A DNA stretch of 64,000 bases from Salpingoeca rosetta (Eukaryota; Protista; Choanoflagellata): contig JAWQFM010000002.1 of assembly GCA_033442325.1 (NCBI GenBank), forward strand, positions 502,442-566,441. Direction: 5' to 3'. Shown one piece after another: positions 1-64,000 of the stretch; the stretch's first letter is position 1; each line of letters starts with the position of its first letter. The notes beneath the pieces were generated by a model. That model did no database searches, was not told where the DNA came from, and was given only the letters and a program-made list of their open reading frames with translations. The position numbers and the translations under genes are program-made.

Positions 1-3000
1 AGCCGCGTGTACGGGTCCGTGTCGCGCTTGGCGTTCTCCAGGAACAGCTGGCGGAACGGATAACCGGTGGGCTGCGACGTGACATACGCCGTGCCAGATG
101 CGCCGTGTCCGAGGCGCCCGCTGCCACCTCGGGTGAGCAGGCTGCCCTGGAAGTGGTTGGTCTTTGCCACCTCAATCACAATGCGGCCACCGCTGCCCGC
201 GCTGCCACAGGTGGAGCACGTGGCGTCGCCGCCAGCGACGGAGATGGTACCAACACCGTGCATCGTGTCCGACACACGCATGTAGAAGGAGCCGCCACTG
301 CCAGAGCCGCTGCTACCACCAGCATGGGCACCATCGACAGCAACTCTGCCATCAATGCTGGCATCCTGCGTTTCCACGCGGATGAAACCGCCACCGCGGC
401 CGCCGTTGGTGTTGCCGCCGCCAGAGCCGAAGCGGTCCGCCCAGTACACGCAGCCGTGCTCGTTGACATGTGTGCCGGACACGGGCCCAGATGCGCCACC
501 ATAGCTGCCGCCAGTTCCGAGCATGAGCCCACCGCCAAAGCCTTGGCCAAAGGCATGGCCGAGGCCCGTGGCGGAGAGCACAGCGCCGTAGCCAACAGTG
601 AACGTGGTTGACGTGAAGATGACATGGCCCGCATCCATCTGCCCACCTGCAGTGAGCAAAAAGTCAACAGCGGAGAAGTGCATGGCCGTATCAGCCACAC
701 GCGTGTGCCGCTGCGAGGGCACGTCGCTGCCTTGCACGCCGTCGTAGGCGCCGTCCTCGGCATCTCCTTCAATGGTAACCTGGCCATCCTGTGCAACCTC
801 AAAGTACCGGAATGACAGCTGACCCGGGGGATCGATGAACGTGTATGAGCCCGCGCCCTCGCCCGTGGCCGTGTGACTTGTGCGGCGGAAGCGCACTGTG
901 GCACCGTTGCTGACAACCATCTGATTACCGCCTGTGAGCAGACCTTGCAGGTCCAGGGTCGGCGACACGGAGGTGTCCGGAACCGTCACCCGCTGCGGAA
1001 GCACCAGCTCAGCTGAGGGCTCAACGACAAATGCGCTCGGAAGCGAGAGCGGGCGGCTCGATGCGGCGCGCGAAGCAGCCACATACAGAGACACGCCATC
1101 ACGCACATACGCGCGAGCAGTTGCATCACCAGTGACACGACGCAGGATGATCTTGGCAGTGGTGCTGCATTCAAACGAAACTTCTGCGGCTTCGATCAGG
1201 TCAAACACATCCACCGCTGTCGACGCAGTGCTGCCCACGTTGAACGAGGTTGGCAGCTGTGGCCGCACACCACCGTTGCGGAAGACCATGGACGTCGTGG
1301 GAATGCCAAACAGCAGCTGTGCCCTGTAGATCGTGCCTGGCGCACCAGCAGTCGCGGCTGACGTTGAGCCGCCGCCACCGAGAGCACGGAACTCACCCGC
1401 AAACTGGGACTGGTCGGGCGTTTGCACGGAGATGCGCCCACCAGAGCCACCGTAAGCACCAGCGCCCGTTACCCGACCGCCGTTGGCGGTCATGGAGCCG
1501 TGGCCCTTGAGCACGTCCGCCTCGATCAGGATGGAACCGCCAGAGCCCGCGCCAGTGCTCGCGGAGTCGCCATTCACCACAAGTTCGCCGTTGAGAAGCA
1601 GCTCGCCTGCAACGTGGAAGCTGATGACGCCGCCGCCGCGTGCAACGCCGTTGGCGCCGCTGCCATACGACCTTGGCCACATTGTGGAGCCGTACGTCAC
1701 CTCGCTGCGCTGTGGGCCTGAGCCGGGACCGCCGTAGGAGGCGCCGCTGTTGGCGCCAGCGGCACCGGGGCCTGCAAGCTCGCCAAAGCCAGACAGGCCG
1801 ATGTTGGCGCCGTTGCCGAGGAAAGCGTTGTCGCAGATGAACGTGAAGTTGCGTGTGCCTGAGTCGGGCGTGTCCAGCAGCGCGTTGTAGCCCATTTGGA
1901 AGTAGCCGATGCGCAGAATGGGGTGGGCCGTGCCCAGTCGCATGACGGAGTCATCCTGAAGCACCAGAGAGTCCAACACGTAAGTGGTGGCATCACCGTC
2001 AGTACCGACGACCGCGCCTTCATCAAGCTGAAGCCGTGCCGACTTGCCAACCACAACAGCAAGCGTATCCAACTGGGCGCCGTCGTGCACAACTGCGCGT
2101 GTGTTTGGACCAAGACTGAGGTACGGGCCAAGAACCTGGCCATACACCTCCAAAGCGGGGTTGCGCGTGCCCAGCAACAGCGTCGTGTTGACCAGGTCAA
2201 GCACAGCCGTCAGCCCTGGGGTAATAGGTTCCTCCGTATGTCGCCGATGTTGGCGCCGTTGCCGAGGAAAGCGTTGTCGCAGATGAACGTGAAGTTGCGT
2301 GTGCCTGAGTCGGGCGTGTCCAGCAGCGCGTTGTAGCCCATTTGGAAGTAGCCGATGCGCAGAATGGGGTGGGCCGTGCCCAGTCGCATGACGGAGTCAT
2401 CCTGAAGCACCAGAGAGTCCAACACGTAAGTGGTGGCATCACCGTCAGTACCGACGACCGCGCCTTCATCAAGCTGAAGCCGTGCCGACTTGCCAACCAC
2501 AACAGCAAGCGTATCCAACTGGGCGCCGTCGTGCACAACTGCGCGTGTGTTTGGACCAAGACTGAGGTACGGGCCAAGAACCTGGCCATACACCTCCAAA
2601 GCGGGGTTGCGCGTGCCCAGCAACAGCGTCGTGTTGACCAGGTCAAGCACAGCACCCGTGCCCACCTTGAAGTTGGTGTTGCAGAGCGCGTCCTCAAAGT
2701 AGTCCACTGTGAAGCGACTGTTGTCCCTCAAGTCAACGGAACCGGCGCGGTCGCCCTTCAGAGTCGCCGCCGTGATGACTGCGTTTGGCTGCACAATGAA
2801 GGTGGCGCCGCCACTCACGACAAGCTCCTCCACAGCGACATCACGGCTGTAATCGGGATCACGCAGCGTTGTTGAGCCTTCACCAGCAATGGTCACGCGC
2901 TCGCGCCACATGCCGTCAACTTGATCACGCAGGAACACCGTACCAGGCCCAGCACCGTTGCCACCACCATATGCAGTCAGGGTGCCCTCAAAGCGGTACT

Positions 3001-6000
3001 CGTTGTTGGTGGTGACTTCAACGGCAATGCGGCCGCCAGAGCCGCCATAACCGCCGTTCCGGCCTTTGCCGCCATTGGCCTCTATGACACCTGTAATGCC
3101 GTGGAACTTTGGTGTGGTGATCCAAACCGAACCACCCGCACCACCGCCAGCTGCCAGCGGATATCCCGTGCCCGAGGCGCCGTTTGCCTGGATGGTCCCG
3201 TCGTGCGTCATTTTTTCGCCCACAATCAGACGGACCACACCGCCACCAAGGCCGCCGTCGCCGGCGCCAGCACCGCCAGCCTCAGAGGGCGCGGTCACAG
3301 CACCGTACACGTCATCGTCGTGTTGGGTAAAGCCGCCATGGAAGCCACCACGGCCAGCTGTGGTCGGCGTGCCCTTGGGGTTGGACGCAACGCCGTTGGT
3401 GAGGATACGTGAGCCGCCGCGGGTGATCAGGTCCCTGACGCGAACCACCGTGGGCGTGGTTGCGTCGTGCTGCACGGTGATGTACGAGTTGCCCTGCAGC
3501 TCAAGGCGGTCGTACTCGTGTTCGCCCGGCTCCAGGAAGCAGTTTTCGCCTGGTGAGAGGGTGAAGCCTGTGCGGTAGTCGCATGAGATGGCATAGGTGA
3601 TGTTCCAGTACGTGTAGTACACGCGCTCGACTGTCGTTTCGTTCCAAAAGTACGTCTGGTTGTGGATGCGCGTCTCTGTGTACGTGTACCACGACTCGAG
3701 ATCATCAACACACGTTGCCTCGCTGCTGTGGTTGAGATACTGGGCCCGAGGCCCAAGCACCATCGGCCACGGATAGCCTGTTGTCAAGTCAATGCCGGCC
3801 GTACTGTTGCCTGCCGTGCTGTTGTTGCCTGTCGTGCTGTTGCCAAGCATGGAGTCGGTCATGTTGCTCATGGTCAAGTTGAACAGCAGTCCAGCGTAAG
3901 GCGAGCTGGAGTTGGCTGACAGTTCTCCTGCCAGGTACAGCTCGAGATCCTGTGCAAACCGACACCCGCCCAGCACAAGCGCGTACGCAGTGTTGTTGAC
4001 AACCGTCACGTTGTACGGCAGAGAGCGAATATCATGCTTCTCCTCCGTAATCAGCTTGTTGTAGTATGTCGTGTGCGACACATTGCGCTCGTCCACAATG
4101 AGCTCGCCCTCGCGGCACGGGTTGTAGACCACATACGACTCGTTGTGGTGTAACTTGACGCCCGTTGGGCACGGCTGGTTGTTGAAGTACTGGTAGCATT
4201 TCGACGACACGCAGTCGTCACGGTTGGTTTGCTGGTCGCACGTGCGAGGCTGCCAGTCATACGAGAACACGGGGTCGTACACGGGATCCTCCTTGCAAGT
4301 ATGCTGGAATCGCTCTGCGGCTGTGCAGTTGGACTCGCGGCACACGTCCGCAAAGAAGTCGTCACAGTCTGGGCCCTTCTCGCAGTAGCGCTCGGGCCGT
4401 TCGGGGCACTCCGTCTCCGAGTTGAAGTCGTCGATGGGCTGGTCCTGGCAGCCGCAGGTCTGAGTGACGGGGTGCCAGAAGCACGTGCTGCCCTCAACAC
4501 GCCCGGCTTTCTCCACATTGACGTTTGGAGCGTCGCGTGCAGGCTCAGGGATGCCGGCAAAGTCGTATGACGCGTTGTAGTGCACGTTCAAGGAATCGAC
4601 GACGAGACGTGTGCTTAAAGGCGAGAGTGACTTCACCACACCCGTGTACAGCACCGTCACGTTCCGCATGGCGTAGGTGCCAGGCACTGTCTGACCTGAT
4701 GTGTACCCGGAGGATGTGATGTTCCACTTGCCGTCCTTGCCCACGAGCAGGTGCTCGAGCCCGTTGAGCTGGCCCTGCGAGACCATGGTTGCGCGCAGCT
4801 CCACGGTTGCGGGCAGGTCGGCAATGCTGCCCTCCTGCAGGAAGAGGTCAAGGCGGATGTCTCGCTCCTCGTCCTCGCTCGTGGCCGGCGGCAGCGTCAC
4901 GCGCTGGTCGCGGCCAATCACAAGGCGTGCTGTTCCGCCCGTGCCCAGCAGGTGCGTTGCCGTGAGGGCAGAGGGCTCCCCTGGTGCGGGGTACATGGCC
5001 AGCTGCGCGCCATCGCCAACACGCACCTCGTCAAACGAGTACACAAAGGCACCCGTGCCAGGCAGGTTAAGCGTGTCGTCGCCAAAGGAGAGGTAGCTGA
5101 ACGCTGGGTTGTGTGACACGTCGTCAAAGTCAAATGCTGCCTGTGCGGGGAAGGATGACGGCGTGCGCCCGCCATTGTTCAGCTCAAGAACGGTGTACGT
5201 GTTGCCATCCGCCTGGGTGCGTTCCGTGTACAGGATACCTGCAGCGCCCACCTCAAAGCCGTCGCCACCAACAGCGCTGATGGTGCCGAAGAAGCGGGAC
5301 TGTGTCTCGTCGTAGCTGAGTGAGATGATGCCACCAGAACCACCGCCACCGCGGAGGTTGTTGTACACGCCGCCGTCACCGCCGTCAGCTGCGAGGGACC
5401 CAAAGCCGTGCAGCGTCGTGGCGGTAATCCACAGGCTGCCGCCAGCACCGCCACCGCCGTCAACAGACACGCTCTCGCCAGAAACGTCGATGCGGCCCTC
5501 CAGCAGAACGGTGTCCGCGGAGATGCGAACGGCGCCACCACCGCGGCCGGCCTGGCCTTGCGACCCAGTGGATCCACCAGGCCCCATCGTCACGGGCGCG
5601 AAGATGGAGCCAAACGGTTGCGAGCGTGTCACAGACGTGGAGCCGCGGCCGCCGCAGCCGGCATGCGAGGCGCCGTAGCGGTTGCCCTGCACAGTACCCG
5701 GACCCGTGTTTGGCGCATAGCCGAGCGACGCCGCCGTGATGATGCTGTCGACATGCATGTTGACCTTTGTCGACGCAATCGTTGCGTTGCGCACGCGAAT
5801 CTCGGAGTATCCCTGCAGCTCCAGGTCATCCACCTTGAACGTGGTGGTGTTCATCGTATCCGTGGCCAGCCATGTGGCACCGGCTGACAGCACCAGTCGT
5901 GACAGCTCGACCAGGTTCTGCGCACCGCCCTGAGACGGTGACGGAACAATGGCCGCGTCCTCGTACATGGTGACTGTGCAGTCTGAGACCGTGAGCTCGC

Positions 6001-9000
6001 TCAGGCTGGTGACGCGGCCGCGGTTGTACAAGCTGTTCTTGTGCAGCGTGACGCGCGTGGGCAGACGAAGCTCGCCATCGCGGTACACGCGCAGGTGCAG
6101 CGGCAGGTACTCGTTGGACTTTTGAATCTCAAACACCTGGTTGTGGGCGACATGCAGGTGGCCGTAGTTTGTTGGCTCAGCGTCACCAACCATCTCCACA
6201 ACGCGCACAAACAGCGTGTCCGTGCCGGACGGCAGCTGCATGGCAAGGTGGGCAGACCCATGAATGGTCAGCGTGTCAAACGTGTAATCGACAACCTCAC
6301 CCAGCGGCGTCACCGCAGCGACGTTGGGCTGTTCCGGGATGGTGATCCACGTGCGGCCCTTGTCATGCTCGATGTCAGAATAGTCCACAAACTCAGACAC
6401 GCCGTTGGTACCGTCGGCGTCCTGCCCGCCATTGTTGATGGTGAGTGACGTCTTGGTCGTGTACGCGTCCATGGTGTAGAACGTGCCGGATGGCGCGGGC
6501 TCGTTTGCCCCAGCCCCACCACGAAGGTCAAGGCTGCCAATGAACTGATTGCCAGGGCACTCGTCAAGGCTGGCGCAGGAGCGGCCAACAGACGTGTACA
6601 CCGCAGCGCGCCCGCCAGAACCACCGCCGCTCTGAGAACCGCGACCAACGCCGCCGCGCACGGAGATGAGGCCGCTGCCAACGACCGTCCACGCCTCGAG
6701 AAGCACAGAGCCGCCGCTGCCAGCACCGCCGGAAACGCTGCCGTCAGAGAGGGACACCTGCGGAGAGGCGCCGTTGCACAGGACCTGGCCGTCGATGCGC
6801 AGCTCCCCTGTAGCGCGGATGTGCAGCACACCGCCACCGTAGCCGCCAAAGCTGCCGCCACCGCGGCTGCCGGCCTCCAGCGGGCGCACAACGTCGCCGT
6901 AGAAAGCGCCCGTGTCGACCGTGGCCACGGATCCACCGCGGCCAGCGTGGCCAGCACCCGATCCGCCCTTGCTGAACGCAACACCGTTACCGGGCCCAGA
7001 AGCGGACGCGCCAGAGAGGTCCAGCACAGCACCCTGGGACACGACCATGTCTGTTGTGTAGATGGTGAGCAGGTCCGCCTCGAGGCGCGAGCCGCCGTTC
7101 ATGCGAATTGTCGTGGCATTGAACGTGGCGGCCGAGGATGAGGAGCCCTGGCCACCAGTCTCCACAGAGAGGAGGCTGCCACCGGTCATGTGCAGCTCCC
7201 CGAGGGCAAAGTTGTCCACGGAAGGCCGCAGGCGCAGCACACCTGCGTTGCCGACCGTGGCATTCTCCACGCCGAGCACGGAGCCGGCAATGTCAAGCGC
7301 TACGTCGTTCAGCTGCACATACCCGGGTAGCGACGCTTCGCCGTTCGCGTGCACGACAATGTTGGCGGGCACAAACGCAGAGTCGCCAAGCGCAGCGTCA
7401 AGCCGCTGCTTGGGGGCAACGTGGATCGTGCCCGTGCTGTCGCCTTCGAGGTCATCGACATCCACGGCCACCATCTGGGATGGGTGCTGTGGCGCAAACA
7501 CGACGTGTGCCCCGCCACGTACGTCCAGCTGGTACAGCGACATGGTGACAGAGCCCGCGGTGCTGTCGCTCATGATCACTGCGCGAGCACCGTCGTGCTC
7601 AAGGTCGGGGCCGCCGGCCTCCGTGTTCACGGCCGCCATGTCCACCAGCACGTCCAAATTGCCGTTGTCTACGCGAATGATGTCACGGTTCGTGCCCACG
7701 GAATGGAGCAACAGCGTACCAGAGCCTCCGTTCTCGGCGAGTGCTTGCCCGCCGCGCGTCACCACATCACCGTCGTAGCTGTAGTCCTCATACCACAGGG
7801 CAATGCGGCCACCGCCGCCAGCACCGCCGCCAACGCAGTCGTCGCGCTTGTTGTCGGTGTCGTAGTTGTTCGTGGTCGAGCACCAGCGCCCGTCCGTGTC
7901 CAGGACACACTGCTCATGCACCTCGTTGTCGTAAACAAAGCTGGACGCACAGCGCACGCGCGTGTTTCCGTTGTTGATCAGGTAGTCCACCCCGTCGTTC
8001 ATGCTGGCGTCGCCGCCACGCACGTCCAGTGTGCCCGTGCCGGTCACGACATCCGCCTCAATCAGGATGGAACCACCAGAACCGCCACCAGAGGCGCCGC
8101 TTCCAGCACCGCCAACAGCAGCAATGGTCCCATCAAGCGTGGCGTTAATGGCTTTGATGTACACCAGACCACCGGCAGCGCCAGGCGTGCCTGAGCTGGA
8201 GGTGCCGCCAACGCTGCCAAACTTTGACGGGCGCCATGCTGAACCGTAGGCTGCGGCGACGCGGTCAAAGGCCTGGCTGCGACCAGCAAGGCCGCCGTGG
8301 CTGGCACCGCTCCCACCTTGGTTGGAGTTGTAGCCGTGCCCGTCACCAAACACATTGGTAGCGCGCACGGTGTCTGGCAGGTCGGCCAGCTCAGAGTACG
8401 TGGGGCCGTGTGCCGTGAGCTGCGCGCCCGTGTCCATCATGAAGCGAGACGCGTTGACGCGCAGCCACTTGGACTCCAGCGACCCACCGCTCTGCAGATG
8501 GAGCACGCGAGCGTTGATGTCCAGGTTTGGCTCCGTCGTGATGGCACTCAGTGCCTGCACCTTGCCCAGGTTGCTCACGTAGAGTGCATCGAGCTCAAGC
8601 GTGCGTACATGCTCGTCGATGAAGGCAAGTGTGACGGGTTTGGCTACCTCAAGCTCAGAGACGCCAGAAAGAGAGCCGCCAATGTCAACTGTATTGTACG
8701 ACAGGCCCTCCAGGTGCACATATGACGGCAGGTTCAACACAGATCCTGTACCTGACGCGAGTGAGAATGGGAATGGCACAGGTGTTTCCTTAATCTCGGA
8801 GTGGCTGTTGTCAAACACTTTTAGGCGGCCAGTCAGGTCACCCTGGACCTTACTCACGGCCATGTCAACGCCTGACCCGTCACTTGAGCACACGCCAACA
8901 GCCGCTTGCCCATGAATATCAAGGAGATCAAGCTTCAGCGTCGATGATCCAGTCAGTGGATCGCGATCGAAAATGACCCACGCATGGCCGTAATCACTGC

Positions 9001-27000: not shown

Positions 27001-30000
27001 AGCGTGTACGTGCCGGAGATGGTTGCGGCGGGCACTGTCTCGTACACGATGGAGACCTGACCAGCGGAGAAGGTACCGGCCACGGTGAGCGTTTCAACGC
27101 AGTAGGATGAGCCCTCTGCGTCCGACCAGTCGTGACTTGGTGTGTCGTGCCCAAGGTCATCGAAGATGAGAAAGCTGTTGGGATGAATGGTGATGCTTTG
27201 GACGCGGCCCATGTCATGCTGGCTGCGCAAGTTGACGGTGCGCAACACCTCCACCCGCCCGTCAATGTTCACCACGTCCGCGCGCCAGTACTTGTTGGCT
27301 GCGTCAAACGTGACGTAGCCGCCGTCAACCTTGAACAGCTGCGAGCGGAAGCGCATGTACCCGGCCTTGAGCGTGCCGCTGACGATGATCTGCACGTTGT
27401 CCAGGACGTGGCCAATGCGAGACGGGGTGTACGCGTCCCAGGCGCCCGGCGAGAGCGCGTGGCCGTCGAGGTCAATGGTCATGTCTCCAGAGACGCTCAG
27501 CTGCGCCGTGGTGTTGAAGCAGGCCGGGCGACGCACGCGCACGGTGCCGTCGACGTTAATCACGGCAAACAGCGCGTCCGCACCGGGATAGGGGGGATCG
27601 AACGTGAACAGGCCGGCGGCGTACCGGAGAGGGTTGACGCTCGTCTGCGTCTTGCCAACGGTGAGCGTGTCCGTGCCTGGAAGCAGCGTCTCCAGGCGGC
27701 CGGCGTTTAGCGTGCCGTGCACGGTGATGGCGTCAAAGTGCAACAGGGAGGAGGAGACCCCCGTCCATGCGTGATCCTGCGTGGCATGGCCGAGATCATC
27801 CAGGGTCATGGTACCACCATAGTGCACACTGAGGTACGTGGCACGGGTGCTGCGATCTTGGTTGCGGATGCGGACCTGGCGGCGCACCGTCACCGTCCCG
27901 TACACGTCCATTTCGTCCACGTATGCCTTGAAGTCGTGCGCGTCAAAGGTGAGGGTACCACGAACGGTGAGCTTTGCTGCGCGCAGCGAGAGGTACCCGG
28001 CATTGACGGTGGCGCCGTTGGCAATGGTGATGCTGATGCCCTCGACGGAGCGGCCGATGACAGACTCGTCGTACTGGTCCCACGTGCCCGGGTTGTTGTG
28101 CCCGTCAGCGTCCAGCTTGAGGGTGCCGGTCACGTCGAGGGACGTGAGCGTCTGCAGGTCCACGGAGCGACGCACGGTCAGCGTGCCGGAGACGGTGACG
28201 GAGGCGAACAAGGCCACGGCGCCCGGCTGCGGTGGATCGAAGTCCATGCTGCCGGAGACAACGAGGGTGGACGCGCCAGGCATGATTGTCTCCAGCCTGC
28301 CCGCTTGCAGGACACCGCCAATTTCAATGGACTCCGCATGCAGGAGCGAAGATGCGGTGCCGCTCCAATCGTGGTTGGGCGTGTTGTAGCCCAAGACATC
28401 GAGGATGGCCTGACCGCCCGAGAAGACCTTGAACGACGTCATGCGCGTGACGCGGTCCACGTTGCGGAAACGCGCCTGGCGAAGCACGTTCAGGTGGCCC
28501 CTAACCACAACACTGTTGACAAACGCATCGTGGGCATACGCGGCATCCATGGTCACAAGACCGGAGGACGTGATGCTCAGCGAGTCAGCGCGGAGCACAA
28601 CGTACCCCGCCTTGAATGTGCCCGAGACTGTGATCGCGAGGTCGTTCACAAGCGCGCCAAGCGCCGATGGAGGGTTGGCCTGCCAGGCGGGGGCAGTGCC
28701 CGCAGTGTGGCTGTCGTCGTCAAGCACCAACGTGCCGCTTACCGTCAGCGTGTCTGTGGTGGTGAGGTTGACTGGGCGACGCGCCTTCAGGCTGCCAGAC
28801 ACGTCCATGCTGGCAAACTTGGTGATGGCGCCGGGCTGTGGCGGGTCAAAGGTCATGCTTCCAGTGACGGTGAGCGTGTCTGTGCCGCTGCCGACGGTTT
28901 CGAGTCGACCCGCAGCGAAACTGCCCTGCACGGTGATGGTGGCCGCGTGCACCAGGGAGGTTGCAGCACCGCTCCACACGTGGCCCGCGGTGCCGTGGCC
29001 GAGCACATCAAACGTGACGTCGCCGGAAGGGGTGACGAGGAACGATGCCATGCGGCTGGTGCCATCCCTGGCATGCAAGCGCACCTGTGTCCGCGCGTCC
29101 AGCGAGCCGCGCACAGTCACCGTGGTGATGTGAGCCTCGTTCGAGACGGCCTCCATGGTCATGGCACCGCTCTGCTCAACGGTGAGCTCGTTCCCCGCCA
29201 GCGCAACCAAGCCGGCCCGCAGCGTGCCCGAGACGGAGAGCGTGTTTACGTCGAGGAAGGAGCCTGTGGGAGAGGACCAGGTGCCGCTGGTGTGGCCGCT
29301 GTCATCCAAAGTGAGGACGCCACCCGCAGCAACGGTGACGGCTGTCAAGGGTGACAAGCTGTCCTTTGCGCGCAGGTCCACCTGGTTGTCGATGGTGAGT
29401 GTCCCGCTCACCGTGATCTGGTCCACTTCCACCCTTGCGGCCTTGGCCAGCACCGTCATCGTGCCAGACACGGAGATGGACGTGCCCACAAACTCGAGGC
29501 GACCGGCGTTGAAGGTACCGGAGACGGAGAGCGCGCCAATGTACAGGGACGAGCCCGCCTGGGCGCCCGCAACAGTGTTGTCGTGGGACACCTTGTCAAG
29601 CACAAACAGGCCATTGTTGCCCACAGTGACGGTCGTCAGGTATGACCTGCCATCGTATGCACGTATGTCTGCCTGGTTGTCCACAAGGAGCTTGCCGTTG
29701 ACGGTGATCTTGGTTGCAGCAATGGCAGCGCCCTTTGCTTCCATCGTCAGGGACGCGCCGCCGCCGCCAATGAACAGCTCTGCGGTGGACAGGCCGAGCA
29801 AGCCCGCGTCGAAGATGCCGTACACCGTCAGCTTGGCCGTGGGCATGAGCGAGCCGGGGGTACCTGTCCAGTTGCCGCTCGCCGCACGCGTGGCCTCGTC
29901 AAAGAGCAGCTTGCCCGTGCCTGCGATGGTGACGTCCGTCAGGTCTGACGAGCCGTCCTTGGCGTTGAGCTGGACCTGGTTCAGGACGGTGAGGGTGCCG

Positions 30001-33000
30001 GCAACGGAGAGCGAGTCCGTCAACAGGCGAATGTCCTTGGCCTCCATATGCATGGTGGCAGTCGGGTCCACGGAGACGCTGCCAGCCTCAAGCGCCATCA
30101 AGCCGGCGTTGAACGTGCCCGTGACACTCAGCGCTCCGCTGATGGGCAGCGAGGAGCCAGCTGTGGAAGACCACGACGTGCTGGATGCGGCATACACGGC
30201 CGCGTCCAGGGTCAGCGTGCCGCTAACGGAGACGGAGCTGAGGTCCGAGGAGCCGTCCTTCGCATTAAAGGCCGCCTGGTTGAGGATGGTGATGGTGCCG
30301 GCGACGGAGAGGGAGTTCACCAGCACGCGGTTGTCCTTTGCCTCCATGTGTAGCTGGCCGTTGCTGTTGACCTTGAGGGCACCGGCCGACACGGAGATAA
30401 GCCCAGCGTTGAAAACACCAACCACCTTCAGGTCGCCGCTCACGGGCAGCGAGGAACCCGTGGTGGAGGACCACGACGTGCTGGACGCATCGTACACGGC
30501 CTTGTCCAGCGTCAGCTTCGCGCCGGCGCTCACCGTGACGGAGGTGAGATCGGACGAGCCATCCTTGGCTGTGAAAGCAGCCTGGTTCAGGACGTACATG
30601 GCGCCATCCACCGCAAGTGAGTTGGCGCGCATCTGCATGTTCTTCGCCTCCATGTGCAGAGTGGCGCCCGCATGGACGGTCACAGGCCCCGCAGAAATGG
30701 CAATCAGGCCCGCGTTGAACTCGCCCCGCACTGTCAGCTCACCGCTCACGGGCAGCGAGGAACCCGTGGTGGAGGACCACGACGTGCTGGACGCATCGTA
30801 CACGGCCTTGTCCAGCGTCAGCTTCGCGCTGTCACCAACCGTGACGGAGGTGAGGTCGGACGAGCCATCCTTGGCTGTGAAAGCAGCCTGGTTCAGGACG
30901 TACATGGCACCGTTCACGACGAGCGAGCCAGTACGCACCTGGCTGCCCTTTGCCTCCATGTGCAGGGTGGCGCCCGCGCTGACGGTGAGCAGGTCTGTCG
31001 AAATGTCGATCAGGCCCGCCTTGAAGTCGCCAGAGACCGCGAGTGCGCCGCTGACGGCAAGCAGGGAGCCGGTCGAGGAAGACCACGTCGTGCTGCCCGC
31101 GTCGTAGACGGCCTTGTCCAGGATGAACATGGCGTTGGCGCCCACGGTGACGGAGGACATGTCGGACGTGCCGTCGCTGGCTCGCATGGCAGCCTGGTTG
31201 CTGACGAACAAGTTGCCGAGCACAGAGAGCTGCGAGGCGAGGAGCTGGTTGTCCTTTGCCGTCATGGACAGCGTGGCGCCCGCCGCCACGGAGAGCGAGT
31301 CGGTCACCAGAGCAAGCAGGCGAGCAGTCAGTGTGCCCGTGACGGTGACGGCGGCCGCATGCACAGACGAACCGTCTGCGTTGCCTTCGTCGTCGTCGTC
31401 GAGCGAGAGCGTTGCACCGCTGCTCACCATGAGCTGTGTCAGTGGGCCAGTGCCCGTCTGGGCGCGCATGCTCACGCGGTTCTCCACCGTCAGCTGCCCG
31501 TTGACAGTCAGCGTGTCGACGTGCAGCTGCTGCTGGTGCGCACGCATGGTGAGCACGGCGCCAGCGGCAACGGTGACGGAGGCGGCGCGAATTGCAATCT
31601 GGCCCGCGTTGAAGGTGCCGCTGACGGAGACGGTGGCGTCCTCAACGGTGGCGCCGATGCCAGAACTGGCCTGCGTGTTCCACGTCCCCGTGGTGTGGCC
31701 CACCTTGTCGAGGATGAGCGTGCCGGACACGTCGAGGGAGGTGAGGCCGCTGAAGCTGACAGGGTAGTTGATGTTGCAGGTGCCAGACACAGTCACGGCC
31801 TGCGCGGGCAGGGTGTCACCGGGCGTGGCAAGCTGGAGATCCATGGCGCCGCTGATGGTGAGCGCCTGCATGGAGGGCATGGTGAAGTGGATTATGCCGG
31901 GGAACATGGAGCACCCTGACGCGACCGTCCACGTGTTGACGGCAATGTCGGACGTGGAGGTGTAGCTGCCGGCGACGTAGCCGCGGTAGTCAAAGTACAC
32001 CACAGACGAGGACGCGACGCTCAGCAGCGAGGCCAGTGCAGAAGCAGGCCCCGTCCACTGCACCCTGCGGTAGAAGAGGGCCTGGGATGAAGAGGTGGCT
32101 TGGAACGTGTCAATCGATGTCCCGCCCGACACGTCGGCGTGGAGGGTGGACGCAGTGAGCTCCACGGCAGGGCTGACGAGCGTGGAGATGGCGCCAAAAC
32201 GCAGGGTGGACGAGGAGGTGGCCGTGATGGATGCCACGTCCACGGACCCCGATGCCGCTGCCCATGAAGGCACGCTCACCACGACGCTGAAGACGACGGA
32301 GGGGAACGCCGCGTCTGTGTAGTTGAATGTGCCTGGGGTGTCAAAGGTGTGGCGCAGGACGTTGCTTCGCGTCAGACCGGCGGAAAAACTGCCGTCTGCC
32401 GCGGCAATGCTGTGCTGTTCATTCTGCCACACCCATTGCACCGTGTCACCGGGGTGGATGTTGAGCTGCTGCCAGCCAGCGCCTGTGCTGAGCACGGCAC
32501 TGTGGGTCACGGTAGCGGTGTCCTGCGCTTCAAACAGCAGCTTGGACGACGTGGCACTCACGGCAGAGGCGGACAGGAGCACGGGGCCATCGAGCAGGAA
32601 GGACGACGACGACAGCTGCAGGTCGCCGGCGCCGGTGCAGCTCACAGACCAGGCCGAGGCCGGGTTACCGCGGCGCACGACGAATGACGCGTCGGTCAGT
32701 GTCAGTCCTTTGGTGCTGATGCCCGTTGTTGGCGAGGAGGCGGCCAGTGTGACAGCAGTGCCAGCGCCCGTGAAGCTGAGCGCTGGCGACTGCGGCGTTT
32801 CCAAGGCACCGTCAATGGCGAGCACGCCCACCACATCAGCGCTCTGGCTGGATGAGAGTGTGAGCGTTGCGCCTGTGGCAACGGCGCTGCGGGCATGGAT
32901 GTTTCCGGACACGGTCACGTGCTGCGTTTCCATGACGTGGAAGAAGCCAGAGGAGCCTGTGATATCGTCAAAGGCGACAGAGGCCGCTGCGCCCTGGAAC

Positions 33001-35401
33001 ACGACCACAGCACCGGAGCGGATGTTCAACGTGGACACCTCGCCATTCCACAGCGTCGGGTTGTACAGAAACGCAGTGTCTGCCAGTCATTATTATGATT
33101 GACGGATTGCCAGTGGTGGTGGTGGTGATTGCCAGTGGTGGTGAGGAAGACAACCGTGTAACCAAGCGTGGGGGCAAAGAAACAGAGGCAGAGCGGGATA
33201 CATGAAGCGTCTTCACATCATCGTCTTCACACTATTCTTCACACTATCCTTCCACGAACGTTCACATTCGCCCGCTCGCGCACACGCTCAAACGCAGAGA
33301 GCCACACCTTCGTAGGAGCTGAGCCAGGCAGTGTAGTCTGTGCTGGGCGTGAAGTCCGTTGGCCGGAAGCGATGGCCAGCATCGACGGCCAGGACTTGCT
33401 GCTGCTTCAAATGGATGATTCCCGCACCACCGCTGCGAGAGCGTTGTGTTGCTGTACATGCGCACGTACGAGTGATGAAGGGATGGAGGTGGGTAGGAGT
33501 GAGCAGACGGGCACGTACAATCCAACGGGTGTAAAACAAGCAAGCAGAGGGGAGGTAAGTCAACGCAAACACAGCCAAGGCAAGTGGCATCAAGGAAGGT
33601 GACAGTGGAGTCAAGGAAGGTGGCATCGAGACAAGTGTAACAGTCCATGCAGTCCGTGTGTTGAAACGTCAAGTTGCCGCACACGCTCACACCTACTCAA
33701 AAGCCGCAGCACCTATCACTCACTCACTCACACGCGCGCACGCGCACACACACACACACGCACGCACGTGCATGGAAATGCTTACGCTCTGTGACGGTGA
33801 TGGTGAAGCTGCAGTACGTGGCAGAAACTGCATCAACAAAGTAGACCACATTGGAGCCGATATGAAACTTGGAGTTGGGAGCAATGGAGGACTGCACGCC
33901 GACGGGAACGGAAAAGTCCACAACCGCATCCAAGCGATCTACGTCCGCTTCGACCGTCATGTCGCTCGGGCAGGAGGCAAGGCCTTGAGTCAGCTGCGTC
34001 GCCACCACCATGACCGTCATGGTGCACGTGTCAACATCGAGCGACCCGTCCTTAGCGTTGAAGGTGACGGTGTGCGTGCCAGAGGAGAACGTGGCTGGAG
34101 AGGATGTCTGTGCTTGCACCTTTGTTTGCGGCCAGACCGCATCAGCTGTCTGGGCCACAGCGCCTGAGCTGTCTGTTGCCACGGGCGCCTCAAACGCAAT
34201 TGTAGCGCTTGGCGAACCATGATGCAGCTGGTTCTCTGGGCACCTGCCCACACAACACGCGGCGTGCGGCGACAAGGAAGCAAGGATGAGGTGAAACGAG
34301 AAATGAGCTCATTTTGAGGTGGTGATGAGGCATGGATAGGGAAACATGAACAGGAATACGAGTCGAGAGGCAAACATGCATGCTTGTGTGCATGCATGCA
34401 CCCGCAAGCACACAACGTGCACACCCATGCATGTACATGCACGAGTGCACGCAGACAAGCGCACCCGCCCGCACGCACAGACAAGCGCACACGCGTACGC
34501 AGACACGTGGGTACAAAGAGGGGGGGGGGGGAGGCGTACCCGTTGCGAAAAAGAGCTGTTGGGCGAACTGGAAGGTGCTTTGCAGACGAGGAAACCTCCG
34601 TCGGGTAGCCAAGGACATCCATGCGAAGGCCGACATTGTAGCCACCAAGCGGGTACACGCGGACACAGCGGGCGAACACGGGCTTGAAGCGGTTTACAAC
34701 ACGCGTGTCCGGGTCGGAGTCGCCCCGGAACGTGATGTCGACGCCGTCCTCCGCATAGGTGGTGAACTGCGAGCAGTCGGTCGAGTACTTGACCTGGAAC
34801 TGCCGCGTCACGTAGTTGTTTTGCGTGTTGCCTGCAGTATGAAGCCAAGAAGGACAAACAAGGGCACGTGAGCTGGGCGTGCACAACGGTGTCCGCGCAG
34901 CTTGAGCTTGTGGATCTCACGGTGTGTGCAAGTGTTTGCATGTGTCAGAATACATGCACCAGGACAGTGTGTGCGCGTGTGTGCAAAGTGTGCGCGCACA
35001 AACCATGCAAAAGAGAGTGGCGGTCACTGTACGTACCTTGGGTGACGACGCCAGATACAAGGTACGTGCCCTGCAGGTTGACTTGCACATAGGGGTTGCT
35101 GTCGCCCGAGTTTGGCGTCCAACCACCGGCGTAACGGAAGCTGTCGATGACTTCGTACGTGGCGTCGAGGAAGGCGCGGGAAGCAGCGTAGTAGTAGCTC
35201 TGCAAGCGATTGTACTTGTCGTAGTAGTTGCTTGCCTTGCGCTGTGTTGAGGCGGTGTACGTGCCGATGTTATGTTCCTCGTTGAAGAGCTCATCCGGCG
35301 CTATTTGCAACACCACAACAGAAGCGTGCAATAAGTGAGGAAATTCAAGTGAGCTTGCACGTGAGATGTGGTCACGGGCAAGGCAAGAAGGCAATAGAGG
35401 A

Positions 35402-35459
<58 letters not shown>

Positions 35460-36321
35460 GCTTATTGTCGTTGTTGTGCGTGAACGTGTGGTGCACAGTG
35501 CACTAAAGCATCAGCGCCCTGCTCACATGATGACACAAAAAGACTTGAGACAAGTACGCAAGCTGGTTTTGTTGACAGGGAGACGCACCTCCAAGACCGC
35601 CAAAGGTCTGAATGAACGCCGTGTTGAATGAGACGGAGGCCGCATCCACGTACACTTCACCACCAGCACCGGCGCCACCCTTTGCAGAGGCAATGCCGCC
35701 GTTGGCCTGCACGGAGGCCGATGTACTTGAGCCTTGCAGGGTGTCGCAGGCGAGGCGGATGCTACCACCGGAGCCCGAACCTGCACCGTCGGTGGAGGCC
35801 TGCTGGCCGTTGGCTCGCACGTGGCCATCGAGGGTGAAGGTTCCCATGACCTGGAGATCCACCACGCCGCCGCCCAGGCCTGCGCCGAGGCCATTGGCGT
35901 CCTCGCCACCAGCAACACCGCCCTTGAGTTGGATGGTGTCCTGCGGAGCGATGGGTGCCTGGAGCGTGCTGGAGTGGCCGCCGCTGGACCAGAACGAGCC
36001 ACCGGGCGCCGCCTGCCCTTGTGAGGCGGAAGTCGCCGCGGTTGTGCAGAACCGTGGGAGCGGCTCTGCCTCAATGGTGGCGTACTCTGACAGGGTGAGG
36101 TCACCGTTGACGGTGGCTCGCGGGTACGTGCAGCCGTTGGGGCGCATGGTCACGACAACGTCGTCTGCGATCGTGACGCTGCGTGGGAAAGTGTGATCTG
36201 CGCTGATGTCGCAGGACGTGGCTATGCGATCCAGTTGGCCGTTGACTGTCTGAAGAGTGCAAGTGGACGCCGCGCTGGTGGCCGAGCACGAGCTGAGAAC
36301 AACGAGCAGGACCGCAACCAT
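1..36321 (-). CDS. Giant secreted Gly-rich repeat protein, >=~11,400 aa, 3' end outside window. Proposed exons: 36321-35589, 35300-35037, 34831-34540, 34243-33786, 33451-33308, 33079-16015, 15961-<1. An alternative in-frame start lies at 36585.
   Basis: ORFs 35503..36669, 34945..35496, 34017..34886, 33724..34275, 33288..33626, 22155..33038, 15565..22158 and 2210..15943 carry related motifs. The five 5' introns have GT-AG ends with matching phases (1,1,2,1,1). The frame from ~2207 down to 1 is open by manual translation (LGNGANIGLSGFGELAGPG...GSGGRIVIEVAK...). MVAVLLVVLSSCSATSAAS resembles a signal peptide. The motif GxGHGG..YG..P..GSGGG..GGGSGGSI..GGGSGGRIA..GAAGT occurs ~19 times. Confidence 0.85.
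1797..2653. repeat. Apparently exact 411-bp direct tandem duplication (1797-2207 and 2243-2653) separated by a 35-bp unique spacer (2208-2242)
   Basis: The copies read identically from gccgatgttggcgccg to ggtcaagcacagc. ORFs 1896.. and 2342.. have identical translations over the repeat. Spacer: cgtcagccctggggtaataggttcctccgtatgtc. Confidence 0.95.
7835..7960 (-). other. Fibronectin type II-like domain inserted in the giant protein
   Basis: CASSFVYDNEVHEQCVLDTDGRWCSTTNNYDTDNKRDDC fits C..PF.Y.....C......WCSTT.NYD.D....C. Confidence 0.8.
12205..12450 (-). other. SUEL/galactose-rhamnose-binding lectin-like domain inserted in the giant protein
   Basis: LECRYGIHVITATYGANCG...HVRELCDQSWFCAYEVSPVAVGDPNPACRKDFDLQYKC has the A-x-YG and GDP..C..K..Y.C signature. 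Confidence 0.8.
15962..16014 (-). other. Probable 53-nt spliceosomal intron joining ORF 15565..22158 to ORF 2210..15943
   Basis: The minus strand reads GAG|GTGCGC...GGCCTCACCGACTATGATCCACAG|GAA. Splicing gives GGYQSRE-EGRGQGVAHQRGASGGGHGG, which fits the other modules and restores the frame. Confidence 0.7.
26100..31900 (-). repeat. Coding tandem array of ~20 ~100-aa Ser/Thr/Val-rich repeats (period ~300-306 bp)
   Basis: Recurring V-x-G-x-F/L-x-AG-x-L/I motif. Near-identical nucleotide copies at ~30436-30603 and ~30742-30909 (offset 306). Confidence 0.85.
32275..32520 (-). other. Plastocyanin/cupredoxin-like fold within the giant protein
   Basis: LNIHPGDTVQWVWQNEQHSIAAADGSFSAG...HTFDTPGTFNY resembles plastocyanin-type domains; the C-terminal C-x2-H-x2-4-M ligands are absent. 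Confidence 0.6.
33786..34243 (-). other. Two HYR-like domains (exon 4 of the giant gene)
   Basis: CPEN...IAFEAPVATDSSG...FSSGTHTVTFNAKDGSLDVDTCTMTVMV and CPSDMTVEAD...FHIGSNVVYF...CSFTITVTE are typical HYR patterns. Confidence 0.8.
34596..35300 (-). other. F5/8 type C (discoidin/FA58C) domain of the giant protein, split over exons 2-3
   Basis: GGWTPNSGDSNPYVQVNLQGTYLVSGVVTQG|N...YVTRQFQVKYSTDC...FRGDSDPDTRVVNRFKPVFARCVRVYP...LRMDVLGY fits the FA58C consensus. Confidence 0.9.
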
Positions 36322-37329
36322 CGCTGCGCGCAGCGTGCGCCATGTGCGGCGCGAGCCAACCACGGCAGTCGCAGCGTCCTTGTGCGGTGACTGCTGTCGC
36401 TGTTGGCGTGGTCGTGTATTTGACTTGCTGCACGGCCTGGACAGTGGTGGCCGTGGGTTGTTGTGTCTGGAAGGCCACACAGCAGGGGCGGACGATCCTC
36501 GGCTCTCAGGGCGAGGATGGCCGTGCCCGTGTGTGGGTGTGGGCAGCGTGTCCCCGCCACCATCGGGCAGGGTTCGCAGCATCATTGTGCCGACGCTCTG
36601 CTGCGCCGGGCTTGCTTTCTGCTGCGTACCTTCTCGTGTCCTGCGGATGGTCAATCGCAGGCTGCACACTAACAGAAGTGGGGAGGGGGGAGATGCACAG
36701 GGGGGAGGGGGAGGAAGGCGTCAGGCACGTTGCTGTTGAAGAACACGAGTCAAGTCCACAGTGGGTGAAGACGTGCAGTGCACTCGTGCAAAAGTGACAG
36801 GAGGGGAGACGAGAACAAACGGGAAGGGTGTGGGAAAAGGAATGGGTCGCTGACACAGCAGCTACAATACAAGCGAGTGGATGTGGGTGGGAAGGGGGGA
36901 GAGAGTGTGTGTGTGCCTTCTTTCTTCCGAGCAACTCAACACACGCACACACGCGCAAAGCCAAGGGCAAAGAGCGAGTAAGCGTGAGCGGGAAACAGAG
37001 TTTGGAATGAGAGATGGCGGAGATGGAGCCAATGTGAAGAGCAGAAAAAAAAAGTCAACACCCCACAACAAAAACCACGCAAACACCCACGCACAGAACA
37101 CAGCGGAGGCGATGGCGCTGCTTGTGTTTCGTGCGGCTTCCTTTGCCTGCAGGCACACAAACAGCAAAGCAAAGAGCAAAGCAAAGAGCGTTCGCCGCCA
37201 CCGCAAGAAAAAAAATTCTGTCCTGGGAGCTGTCGATAATTTGTGAATATCTTTTATGTAGAAAATTGCACATGGGTCCGCCATCCCCAAACAACGCAAG
37301 TTGCACATGTCGAGGTGGGCGAGGGAGGT

Positions 37330-37374
<45 letters not shown>

Positions 37375-37636
37375 TGCGTGTGTGTGTATGTGTGTATGTA
37401 TGTCTGCTGTAGCTCTGTGTGTGTGTGTGTGTGTGTGTGTATCTGCTGTAGCTCTGTGTGTCTGTCTGCTGTAGCTCTGTGTGTGTATCACCATGTGTGT
37501 GTGTGACGATCGGGTTGCTTGCTTCTCTCAAGCTCCTTCACGTCATGCACAACAACCACAAACTCCACACGCTGCGCACGCTGCGCACACACGGACTCCC
37601 CCCCCCTTCTCTCTCTCTTCTGTCTCTCAATCCATC

Positions 37637-38538
37637 TCATCTGCGATGGTGTCTGTGACTGCTGCTGCTGCTGCTGGCGCTGCTTGGGCCCCTGCCGCGG
37701 TCCCGGTCCCGGTCCCGGTCCCGGCTGCGGTGGTGCGTGCTGCTGTCCTTGCGCCGGCGGATGTTGAGCGGGTTGCGGGGGTCGTAGATATCAAGGCTGT
37801 TGGGATCCAGCTCAGGGTCGATGCCCTTTGGTGCAGTCTCAACCTCGTTGGTCAGCTTGTGTTGCATCCTGCACACGTGTGCGTGTGTGTGTGCGTGTGT
37901 GTGTGTGTGCATGTTTGTGTACGTGTGTGTGAGTGTGTGTGTGCATGTTTGTGTACGTGTGTGTACGTGCGTGCGTGTATGTGTGTGTGTGTGTGTGTAC
38001 GTGTGTTTGTTCACGTTTGTGTGAGTGGCACAAGATATTGGGTGACAAAGAAGAAACGCTCAAACACGTGGAACGCGCGCCAAAGGACATCGTGCGCCCA
38101 CGACATCAAAACCACGCCCCCCCCCCCCCCAAAAAAATGTCACCTCTCCTCACCGCCATTACCCACCATGTTGTGTCGGCGACCTCGTCCGAAAGATCGT
38201 CCACACCTGGTGGTGCTGTCACTGCTTCTGTATCGCTTACAGCTGGCGCCAATGCACTCCCGCTCCCACTCCCGCTCCCACCGCCACTGCTGCTGCTCGC
38301 GCTTCCGCTGCCCGCACGGCTGAGCTTGTTGCGGAACTTGGCCAGCAGCGCAAGCGTCTCGCTCTCCCGATCTCCGCGCTTCTTCGCACGCCGTGACTTG
38401 CCCCTGCAGTCATGTGTGCGTGTGCGCGTGTGAACGCACTGGCGAGAACACAACAGCAACTACTACTACTACGACTACTACTACTTTGTGCAAGCATCAA
38501 AACTGGTTTGGCCGTGAACAGAGCCCCCCCTTTCGACC

Positions 38539-38635
<97 letters not shown>

Positions 38636-59415: not shown

Positions 59416-64000
<4,585 letters not shown>

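What the first reader, a model, noticed from the sequence alone, without database searches (positions are those of the whole stretch)
1..36321. One gene for a >11,000-aa (>1.1 MDa) secreted modular scaffold, split into several ORFs
Seen: the three huge ORFs, the open frame at 2207-1 and five small 5' exons share one strand and one repeat vocabulary. They join by phase-consistent introns or single lesions into >=~11,400 aa, with the C-terminus still outside the window. About 19 Gly-rich modules (GxGHGG..YG..P..GSGGG..IDG.V.ANG..GGGSGGSI..GGGSGGRIA..GAAGT..L.V.N..GDRTG.LH) follow a signal-peptide-like start. Inference: a giant extracellular rod or adhesin-like protein (beta-helix plus polyglycine-II segments), a candidate component of the theca, glycocalyx or colony matrix, or of prey capture. 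Automated annotation would probably split it into 3-4 hypothetical genes.
Basis: partly seen in the sequence, partly recalled or inferred. Interest (0 to 1): 0.85.

Follow-up and report, generated by a model that had tools for sequence, protein, structure and literature searches.

The report
Giant secreted beta-helix matrix gene
The window holds most of one enormous Salpingoeca rosetta gene for a secreted rod of about 19 beta-helix modules (over 11,000 residues here, probably 17,000 or more in all), whose relatives are unnamed giant proteins of marine invertebrates; at least one of its apparent ORF breaks is an assembly error.

Summary
Observation confirmed. The minus strand carries stop-free frames of 3643, 2209, 4593 and 798 codons, preceded by five small exons that start with a signal-peptide-like ATG at 36321. 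A 388-residue module recurs 19 times.

The breaks at about 22188 and about 16000 fall inside modules that continue seamlessly, so the ORFs are not separate genes. Three independent read assemblies carry one extra base after 22188, which restores the frame. That break is a base missing from this assembly, not an intron. The break at 16014 is either a 53-nt intron or another missing base. The break at 2200 is a perfect 411-nt tandem duplication plus 35 nt; removing one 446-nt unit restores the frame.

Other points:
- AlphaFold models give beta-solenoids.
- Discoidin, HYR and fn2 domains, with a weak lectin-like match, indicate an extracellular protein.
- Homologues with the same N-terminal layout occur in hemichordates and molluscs; module-array homologues also occur in echinoderms, annelids, amphioxus and cnidarians. 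No Pfam model covers the module.
- The gene continues at least 13 kb past the window (PTSG_13036, expressed in published RNA-seq), probably into an EGF array.
- Below 26867 the sequence exists in two copies, shared with a paralogue.

Function is untested.

The parts
35589..36321 (-). Exon 1: ATG at 36321, signal-peptide-like start, then a partial Gly-rich module (HMM positions 58-298)
   Evidence: Donor AG|GTGCGT after 35589.
35037..35300 (-). Exon 2: N-terminal half of an F5/8 type C (discoidin) domain
   Evidence: PF00754 profile positions 23-57, sub-threshold for this half alone (22.1 bits against a cut-off of 28.2). Splice sites.
34540..34831 (-). Exon 3: C-terminal half of the F5/8 type C domain
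   Evidence: PF00754 positions 59-125, E 1e-7. It continues the half in exon 2..
33786..34243 (-). Exon 4: HYR domain followed by a second HYR-like unit
   Evidence: PF02494, E 9e-9..
33308..33451 (-). Exon 5: short linker exon
   Evidence: colinear with paralogue P0010. The 228-nt intron ends at the acceptor before 33079.
22189..33079 (-). Giant exon, first frame: about 400-aa head, 18 tandem repeats of about 100 aa (31862-26418), then 3.5 Gly-rich modules
   Evidence: AlphaFold model of four stalk repeats has pLDDT 91.7.
26867..26868 (.). Branch point. Below it the sequence has double depth and is also joined, in reads and in the 2013 assembly, to the diverged 5' part of a paralogue (PTSG_13037 region).
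   Evidence: depths 16.5 against 9.2 and 10.4; 115-121 against 63.1 and 73.7; loose ends match L001..
22188..22189 (-). Junction 1: one base absent from the window. Independent contigs carry T, T or C here on the + strand, which gives a Gln codon CAA or CAG and restores the frame inside a module.
   Evidence: table 4; HMM continuity 180 to 179.
15992..22188 (-). Giant exon, second frame: 4.5 modules. One carries inserts of 238 aa (17455-18207) and about 140 aa (16660-17097).
15962..16014 (-). Junction 2: candidate 53-nt GT-AG intron. Alternatively, a one-base omission somewhere in 15991 to about 15925. The module is complete either way.
   Evidence: HMM scores 368.9 against 364.0 bits. HMM positions 130 to 130 across the break.
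2243..15991 (-). Giant exon, third frame: about 9 modules with inserted domains. These are fn2 (7835-7939), a SUEL-lectin-like insert (12188-12469), inserts of about 140 aa (13547-14014, 10292-10729) and a Cys-rich 313-aa insert (3512-4474).
1797..2653 (-). Junction 3: perfect 411-nt tandem duplication (1797-2207 and 2243-2653) with a 35-nt spacer (2208-2242) that holds the stop codon. One unit is 446 nt, which is 2 mod 3.
   Evidence: Removing one unit gives a seamless in-frame module.
1..2207 (-). Giant exon, fourth frame: 1.5 more modules, running off the window start.
   Evidence: It continues in L001 41402 onward.

Best explanation
Positions 36321 down to 1 (minus strand) are the 5' two-thirds or less of one giant Salpingoeca rosetta gene. 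Five short exons and one enormous exon encode a secreted, unbranched beta-solenoid rod.

Layout of the protein:
- signal peptide and a partial module;
- a discoidin (F5/8C) domain and HYR domains;
- an 18-repeat beta-helical stalk;
- about 18 Gly-rich beta-helix modules of about 390 aa in the window, some with lectin-like or fn2 domains inserted at loops.

The ORF splits are not biology. The break at 22188 is a base missing from this assembly (shown). The breaks at about 16000 and at 2208-2242 are most likely of the same kind: a missing base or a tiny intron, and a spurious or very recent 446-nt duplication (inferred).

Beyond the window the array runs through PTSG_13036, giving about 17,000 aa. 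It probably crosses a 1.6-kb intron into a teneurin-type EGF array.

Inferred mechanism: a rigid extracellular fibre, very roughly 0.1-0.2 micrometre long by a back-of-envelope rung count. It would display carbohydrate- and matrix-binding domains along its length and serve adhesion or structure on solitary (thecate or swimming) cells. The fold and the domain content are shown. Secretion, the length of the rod and the role are inferred.
For: - Module continuity across J1 and J2.
- One extra base after 22188 in three independent contig sets. It is a synonymous A/G third position of a Gln codon and gives ...NGQRGGNGGGSIW..., which matches the module consensus.
- Removing one 446-nt unit restores J3.
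- The spliced 5' product has no stops and aligns as one HSP with the paralogue (46.7% over 970 aa).
- Pfam finds F5/8C, HYR and fn2.
- AlphaFold gives pLDDT 85.1 and 91.7. VIA-align gives Z 15.5 to the HMW1 and EtpA beta-helix adhesin domains.
- Homologues at 27-40% identity, with signal peptide, partial module, F5/8C, stalk and modules, occur in Saccoglossus, Ptychodera and Potamilus.
- The array continues in the 2013 assembly.
- The terminal truncated module followed by an EGF array is colinear with Pecten and Ptychodera homologues.
- PTSG_13036 has 405-2787 RNA-seq counts in all eight samples of Fairclough et al. 2013 (PMC4054682, Additional file 9).
Against: - J2 and J3 were not tested with reads. 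A real frameshift or duplication in this copy is not excluded.
- The contigs that carry the extra base could come from the second, paralogous copy rather than from this one, because depth is doubled there.
- No RNA read was laid on 21600-27599: a 2026 RNA-seq run gave 0 reads, and transcriptome-sized contig sets hold none of its words. A transcript spanning the whole window is therefore not shown.
- The published counts are for gene models outside the window or chimeric with the paralogue.
- The 2013 assembly has further frame changes downstream.
- No localisation or functional data exist.
Confidence: 0.7

Rival explanations
1. This copy is a recently inactivated pseudogene. The frameshifts at 22188 and about 16000 and the 446-nt duplication are real lesions in copy A, while the near-identical paralogous copy stays intact and supplies the reads that show the extra base.
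For: Three frame-breaking features lie in 33 kb, all in the same direction. The region below 26867 has double depth, so contigs may represent the other copy. No RNA was laid on 21600-27599.
Against: All other codons (more than 11,000) are open. The missing base sits exactly at a site where independent data sets differ (A or G), as expected of a consensus error at a site that differs between copies. None of the three contig sets showed the deleted form. The window is otherwise in frame where the old assembly has indels.
Confidence: 0.17
2. The window's gene is an assembly mosaic. The 5' part (above 26867) and the 3' part belong to different loci, or the 3' part is a collapse of two paralogues, so the 11,000-aa chain as written does not exist.
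For: The graph branches at 26867, with both the window-type and the PTSG_13037-type upstream sequence. The 2013 assembly joins the other 5' part to the same 3' sequence. Differences between the window and the contigs cluster at 23532-23601 and 24290-24364.
Against: Contigs in two DNA runs from different years cover the window-type junction (26838-27599) without a single difference. Both junctions therefore exist in DNA, and double depth fits two full copies. Either 5' part has the same architecture, so the kind of protein would be unchanged.
Confidence: 0.08
3. The large ORFs are separate genes (three or four hypothetical proteins), each with its own start, as automatic annotation would call them.
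For: ATG or GTG starts can be found in each ORF. Existing annotation splits the locus into several models.
Against: The breaks fall in mid-module with seamless HMM continuity (180 to 179, 130 to 130). No signal peptide, promoter-like gap or non-coding spacer lies between the ORFs, which overlap by 37, 424 and 184 nt. J1 disappears in independent data.
Confidence: 0.03

Closest known systems
Uncharacterised giant proteins of marine invertebrates (for example Patiria miniata LOC119725183, Saccoglossus kowalevskii LOC144342564, Ptychodera flava, Potamilus, Mya, Mytilus, Pecten, Owenia, Branchiostoma, Actinostola)
   Same: They carry the same 390-aa module at 27-40% identity over up to 99% of the query. 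Where the N-terminus is modelled, the order is the same: signal peptide, partial module, F5/8C, stalk repeats, module array. In Pecten and Ptychodera a truncated last module is followed by a teneurin-type EGF array.
   Different: None is characterised. Most animal gene models are themselves fragments that start or end in mid-module. The choanoflagellate gene has HYR, fn2 and lectin-like inserts whose presence in the animal proteins was not checked.
Bacterial two-partner-secretion and autotransporter beta-helix adhesins (HMW1, EtpA, FHA, Ag43, TibA)
   Same: The module has a right-handed beta-solenoid rod fold (VIA-align Z 15.5, 229-235 residues aligned, rmsd 4.3-4.7). They are very long, repetitive, surface or secreted adhesive rods.
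   Different: No sequence similarity detectable by Pfam or by a PDB sequence search. No TPS secretion motif or beta-barrel translocator was found. The export route here is eukaryotic, through a signal peptide. The module carries a Gly-rich core of its own.
Gly-rich core domain of giant bacterial surface proteins (Verrucomicrobiota, Kiritimatiellia, Planctomycetota, Myxococcota and others)
   Same: Profile positions about 110-314 of the module match more than 13,000 protein clusters (4,265 at E<=1e-30), usually 5-12 copies per protein of 2,000-7,000 aa.
   Different: Most bacterial hits cover only the core. The listed full-length (2-397) matches include Saccoglossus and sparsely gene-called metagenome contigs, one of which looks eukaryotic. 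No Pfam-A or NCBIfam model covers the core.
Eukaryotic extracellular beta-helix proteins with G8 and PbH1 repeats (fibrocystin, PKHD1L1, CEMIP)
   Same: Large secreted or surface proteins with parallel beta-helix segments. One starfish homologue has a weak G8 match.
   Different: No G8 or PbH1 match in the window's protein. The repeat is different and the array is far longer.
Tenascin and teneurin EGF arrays
   Same: The probable C-terminal continuation outside the window carries EGF_TEN / EGF_Teneurin repeats. This explains the automatic name 'Tenascin-X' given to the starfish homologue.
   Different: No EGF lies in the window. No fibronectin-III plus fibrinogen (tenascin) or YD-shell (teneurin) parts were seen.

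Membership tests
Holozoan giant F5/8C beta-helix module proteins (unnamed family defined here by the 388-position module HMM) | Tandem 390-aa modules with the motifs GAGHGG ... PYG..P..GS.GG ... GGRGGG ... GGGGSGGS ... GGGGSGGRIA ... GGAGT ... GDRTG.LH | tested here: met
   19 modules in the window. The same HMM finds 5-20 hits in each animal homologue.
Holozoan giant F5/8C beta-helix module proteins (unnamed family defined here by the 388-position module HMM) | N-terminal order: signal peptide, partial module, F5/8 type C domain, about 100-aa stalk repeats | tested here: met
   Window. Saccoglossus, Ptychodera and Potamilus have F5/8C at residues 256-391 after a hydrophobic start, and stalk-repeat hits.
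Holozoan giant F5/8C beta-helix module proteins (unnamed family defined here by the 388-position module HMM) | Terminal module truncated at about position 260-290 and followed by a teneurin-type EGF array | tested here: inconclusive
   It lies outside the window. It is seen in the 2013 assembly only if a 1.6-kb stretch is an intron.
F5/8 type C (discoidin) domain, PF00754 | Match above the Pfam gathering score | tested here: met
   Exon 3 half: 32.4 bits against a cut-off of 28.2. Exon 2 holds the preceding profile positions 23-57.
HYR domain, PF02494 | Match above the Pfam gathering score | tested here: met
   35.9 bits against a cut-off of 21.7.
Fibronectin type II domain, PF00040 | Match above the Pfam gathering score | tested here: met
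   32.6 bits against 22.2 for the insert alone; 24.8 bits in the whole ORF.
SUEL / rhamnose-binding lectin domain, PF02140 | Match above the Pfam gathering score | tested here: not met
   18.6 bits against a cut-off of 31.4 (E 0.0025). A resemblance only.
Two-partner-secretion / autotransporter adhesins | TPS domain or autotransporter beta-barrel detectable by sequence | tested here: not met
   No Pfam hit over more than 11,000 residues. Similarity is at the level of fold only.
G8 / PbH1 beta-helix proteins (fibrocystin-like) | G8 domain (PF10162) or PbH1 / Beta_helix repeats | tested here: not met
   No such Pfam hit in the window's frames.
Secreted protein | Cleavable N-terminal signal peptide | tested here: inconclusive
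   A hydrophobic start follows the ATG at 36321, and homologues start the same way. No signal-peptide predictor was available. An in-frame ATG also lies upstream at 36585.

The most novel reading that the evidence does not exclude
The window, PTSG_13036 and the following 9217-aa gene model form one gene of roughly 26,000 codons: signal peptide, F5/8C, HYR, stalk, about 30 beta-helix modules, then a teneurin-type EGF array. It would be among the largest protein-coding genes of any eukaryote. It would represent a giant matrix or adhesion fibre that already existed in the common ancestor of choanoflagellates and animals and has escaped description because every annotation fragments it.
Probability: 0.3. 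Interest if true: 0.85.

Novelty: new variant of a known kind. Interest (0 to 1): 0.62.

Why it matters
Choanoflagellates are the closest living relatives of animals, and shared extracellular matrix and adhesion proteins are central to how animal multicellularity is reconstructed. This locus points to a conserved holozoan family of beta-solenoid rods well over 10,000 residues long. No Pfam model covers the module and I found no paper describing the family. Annotations in both S. rosetta and animals cut it into 'hypothetical' fragments.

S. rosetta is genetically tractable, so the family's function can be tested directly by knock-out, tagging or proteomics of solitary cell types.

The finding is also a practical warning. 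In this assembly the gene carries at least one consensus error and sits in a duplicated region. Automated calls here will therefore be wrong.

Tried and rejected
- An exact look-up of the 2197-aa middle ORF in public assemblies found nothing. It therefore could not be used to test the junctions.
- The last homology search, with the 5' 2073 residues, returned nothing at E<=1e-20. The 2013 gene model for this copy's 5' part, and its expression, remain unknown.
- A PDB sequence search with the module profile gave only chance-level hits. Foldseek against PDB gave no match at E<=0.001. The exhaustive VIA-align search was needed to place the fold.
- Pfam and NCBIfam at relaxed thresholds found nothing for the module.
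- Literature searches for the PTSG identifiers and for giant beta-helix or matrix proteins of choanoflagellates found no description.
- The RNA raw-read run gave 0 reads. The tool itself marks this as no test.
- An intron at 22190 is rejected. The frame change must lie within the 37-nt overlap of the two open frames (22158-22194), too short for an intron, and an inserted base explains it.
- Plus-strand ORFs of up to 687 aa overlapping the gene have no Pfam hits. I take them as antisense artefacts of G+C-rich coding sequence.
- The 'goes back 717' joint comes from a 36-nt repeat match outside the laid stretch. It is not a rearrangement.
Full report
**Organism and assemblies**

A homology search returned hypothetical protein PTSG_13037 of Salpingoeca rosetta at 99% identity over part of the query. 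Its locus in the 2013 Sanger/454 assembly (GL832990.1, fetched as L001 and L002) is identical to window 26873-24877. It then has a 24.5-kb run of N and resumes at window 262-1. The window therefore comes from a newer, gap-filled assembly of the same region.

- The minus strand has stop-free frames of 3643 codons (22158-33086), 2209 (15568-22194), 4593 (2213-15991) and 798 (3-2396, running off the window).
- I seeded an HMM with one module and iterated it on the window's own frames. It has 388 positions and finds 18 modules in the giant exon plus a partial one after the start.
- Eight full modules are only 24-38% identical to one another, with 27 invariant columns, nearly all of them Gly. The array is therefore old and has been kept open by selection. 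It is not a recent amplification.

**The 5' end**

- The ATG at 36321 opens a hydrophobic, signal-peptide-like segment followed by a partial module.
- GT-AG introns of 288, 205, 296, 334 and 228 nt join exons 36321-35589, 35300-35037, 34831-34540, 34243-33786 and 33451-33308 to the acceptor at 33079.
- The two halves of an F5/8 type C domain lie in exons 2 and 3 at consecutive profile positions. Exon 4 holds an HYR domain.
- The spliced test product (990 aa) has no stop. It aligns as a single HSP, 46.7% identical over 970 residues, with the paralogue's model.

**Junction 1, near 22188**

- The module HMM runs from position 180 at the end of the first frame to position 179 at the start of the second. 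The frame change must lie within the 37-nt overlap of the two open frames (22158-22194), too short for an intron.
- I laid the contigs of three runs from three studies on 21600-27599. Each shows one base put in after 22188: T, T and C on the plus strand.
- With either base the minus strand reads a Gln codon (CAA or CAG). The frame continues as ...GGASNGQRGGNGGGSIW..., which matches the module consensus.
- The window therefore lacks a base at a site where two synonymous variants exist. This is what a consensus error at a position that differs between two near-identical copies would look like.

**Junction 2, near 16000**

The module again continues without loss (position 130 to 130). There are two possible readings:
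- a 53-nt GT-AG intron at 16014-15962;
- one missing base between 15991 and about 15925.

They give module scores of 368.9 and 364.0 bits, which cannot be told apart. The five real introns here are 205-334 nt long, and junction 1 is a missing base. I therefore favour a missing base, at about 65:35. This was not tested.

**Junction 3, near 2200**

- Positions 1797-2207 and 2243-2653 are 100% identical, with a 35-nt spacer between them that carries the stop codon.
- One unit is 446 nt (2 mod 3). Deleting one unit gives a seamless, in-frame module.
- Whether the duplication is an assembly artefact or a very recent real event is untested.

**Two copies below 26867**

- In two DNA runs (2013 and 2024) the contig covering 21600-26867 ends at 26867. 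The graph then branches.
  - One branch is identical to the window (26838-27599, no differences).
  - The other carries the sequence found upstream in the 2013 assembly.
- Depths in one run are 16.5 for the shared part against 9.2 and 10.4 for the branches. In the other run they are 115-121 against 63.1 and 73.7.
- Both junctions therefore exist in DNA, and the part below 26867 is present twice.
- Upstream, the paralogue (PTSG_13037 region) has the same architecture at about 45% identity and is preceded by a JmjC gene.
- Differences between the window and the contigs cluster at 23532-23601 and 24290-24364. These may mark differences between the two copies.

**What the protein is**

- Pfam finds nothing in more than 11,000 residues except F5/8C, HYR and one fn2 inserted in a module loop.
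- One other insert resembles a SUEL lectin below threshold. Three inserts of about 140 aa, one of 238 aa and a Cys-rich one of 313 aa are unassigned.
- AlphaFold2 on the module alignment gives pLDDT 85.1 and pTM 0.88, with a strand pattern typical of a solenoid.
- Foldseek finds only weak beta-helix hits. The exhaustive VIA-align search puts the HMW1 and EtpA secretion domains first (Z 15.5, 229-235 residues aligned), followed by fungal Awp adhesins, autotransporters and tailspikes.
- The ESM Atlas search finds a mollusc cluster at TM 0.93.
- The first 2,230 residues of the giant exon hold 18 tandem repeats of about 100 aa. Four of them model as a continuous beta structure with pLDDT 91.7.
- I saw no evidence for polyglycine-II segments.

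**Relatives**

- The best matches are giant 'uncharacterized' proteins of echinoderms, hemichordates, molluscs, an annelid, amphioxus and a sea anemone. They are 27-40% identical over up to 99% of a 1,411-residue query.
- Where the N-terminus is modelled (Saccoglossus, Ptychodera, Potamilus), they start with a hydrophobic segment, a partial module and F5/8C at residues 256-391, followed by stalk repeats and modules.
- Most animal models begin or end in mid-module, so they too are fragments.
- A profile search of 1.84 billion representatives finds 13,325 clusters (4,265 at E<=1e-30). Most match only profile positions about 110-314. Where a source names an organism, these are giant bacterial proteins.
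- Among the listed hits, matches to the full module (2-397) include Saccoglossus and sparsely gene-called metagenome contigs. The one I inspected has the gene density of a eukaryote.
- Neither Pfam-A nor NCBIfam has a model for the module. I found no paper on it.

**Beyond the window**

- In the 2013 assembly the array continues from window position 1 through 1,209 more codons, a gap, 691 codons and the 3,288-codon frame of PTSG_13036. The old sequence has two further frame changes.
- That frame stops in mid-module (position 177) and is followed by a (TG)n run and 1.6 kb of 51% G+C non-coding DNA.
- Module positions 178-257 then resume and lead straight into teneurin-type EGF repeats. These belong to a gene model of 9,217 aa.
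- Phase-compatible GT-AG pairs join the two halves into one HMM domain covering positions 6-257.
- In Pecten, Ptychodera and one metagenome homologue the last module is likewise cut at position 274-291 and followed by the same EGF array within one model. I take this as good comparative evidence that the 1.6 kb is an intron.
- The gene would then encode about 17,000 aa up to that point and perhaps about 26,000 in all. This is inference; no transcript was seen.

**Expression**

- Fairclough et al. 2013 (PMC4054682, Additional file 9, sheet group_attached_and_swimming) list PTSG_13036 with 2452, 1120, 2453, 2787, 819, 2216, 2266 and 405 reads. The samples, in order, are three thecate, one swimmer, three rosette and one chain sample.
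- The same sheet lists PTSG_13037 with 262, 130, 270, 169, 67, 159, 59 and 100 reads.
- The locus is therefore transcribed. It was classed with genes that are higher in solitary cell types than in colonies.
- For the window itself I have no positive RNA evidence. A 2026 RNA-seq run gave 0 reads on 21600-27599, and transcriptome-sized contig sets hold none of its words.
- That pattern is compatible with 3' bias on a very long poly(A)-selected mRNA. It is equally compatible with an internal promoter.

**Verdict**

I make four corrections:
- One 'junction' is an assembly error.
- One is a tandem duplication.
- The gene is much longer than the window.
- Its 3' part is duplicated in the genome.

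The function is unknown. From the fold, the inserted binding domains and the expression class, I commit to an extracellular adhesive or structural fibre of solitary cells, at about 50%.

Noticed in passing
L001 3857-45031 (GL832990.1, 2013 assembly): Gene model PTSG_13037 (4280 aa) is a chimera. It joins a JmjC/ROX-type oxygenase, the paralogue's 5' part and a 123-aa piece identical to window 24233-23865, then jumps across a 24.5-kb N gap to window 71-3.
   Followed up: partly
L002 17772-19394: A 1.6-kb non-coding stretch starting with (TG)n splits a module exactly between HMM positions 177 and 178. The annotated start of the next model (9217 aa) looks like a signal peptide, but it may be the translation of an intron's pyrimidine tract.
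   Followed up: partly
window 23532-23601 and 24290-24364: Clusters of substitutions between the window and independent contigs, shared by runs of different years and by the 2013 assembly. They may be differences between the two near-identical gene copies or gene-conversion tracts.
   Followed up: no
window 32300-32600 (giant exon residues about 190-260): A short segment resembles a cupredoxin / plastocyanin-like domain. InterPro lists Cupredoxin for the paralogue in Fairclough 2013, and an environmental homologue is named 'plastocyanin'. Pfam gave no hit here.
   Followed up: no
L001 about 45000 and about 48290: The 2013 Sanger/454 assembly has two more frame changes in the downstream continuation (one inside a module, one at a module start). 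They may be sequencing errors but are untested.
   Followed up: no
window 33690-33780, 35400-35480, 37250-37450, 38500-38650: Long (CA)n/(GT)n microsatellites fill introns and intergenic DNA. They create many spurious Cys/Val- or His/Thr-rich ORFs.
   Followed up: no
window 59929-60028 and 62894-62993: Two 100-N gaps lie inside the region that another reader noted as a tyrosine phosphatase fused to EF-hands.
   Followed up: no
profile search: The Gly-rich core (about 200 aa) of the module occurs in more than 13,000 protein clusters, mostly giant bacterial proteins, yet has no Pfam-A or NCBIfam model. It is a candidate for a new domain family definition.
   Followed up: partly
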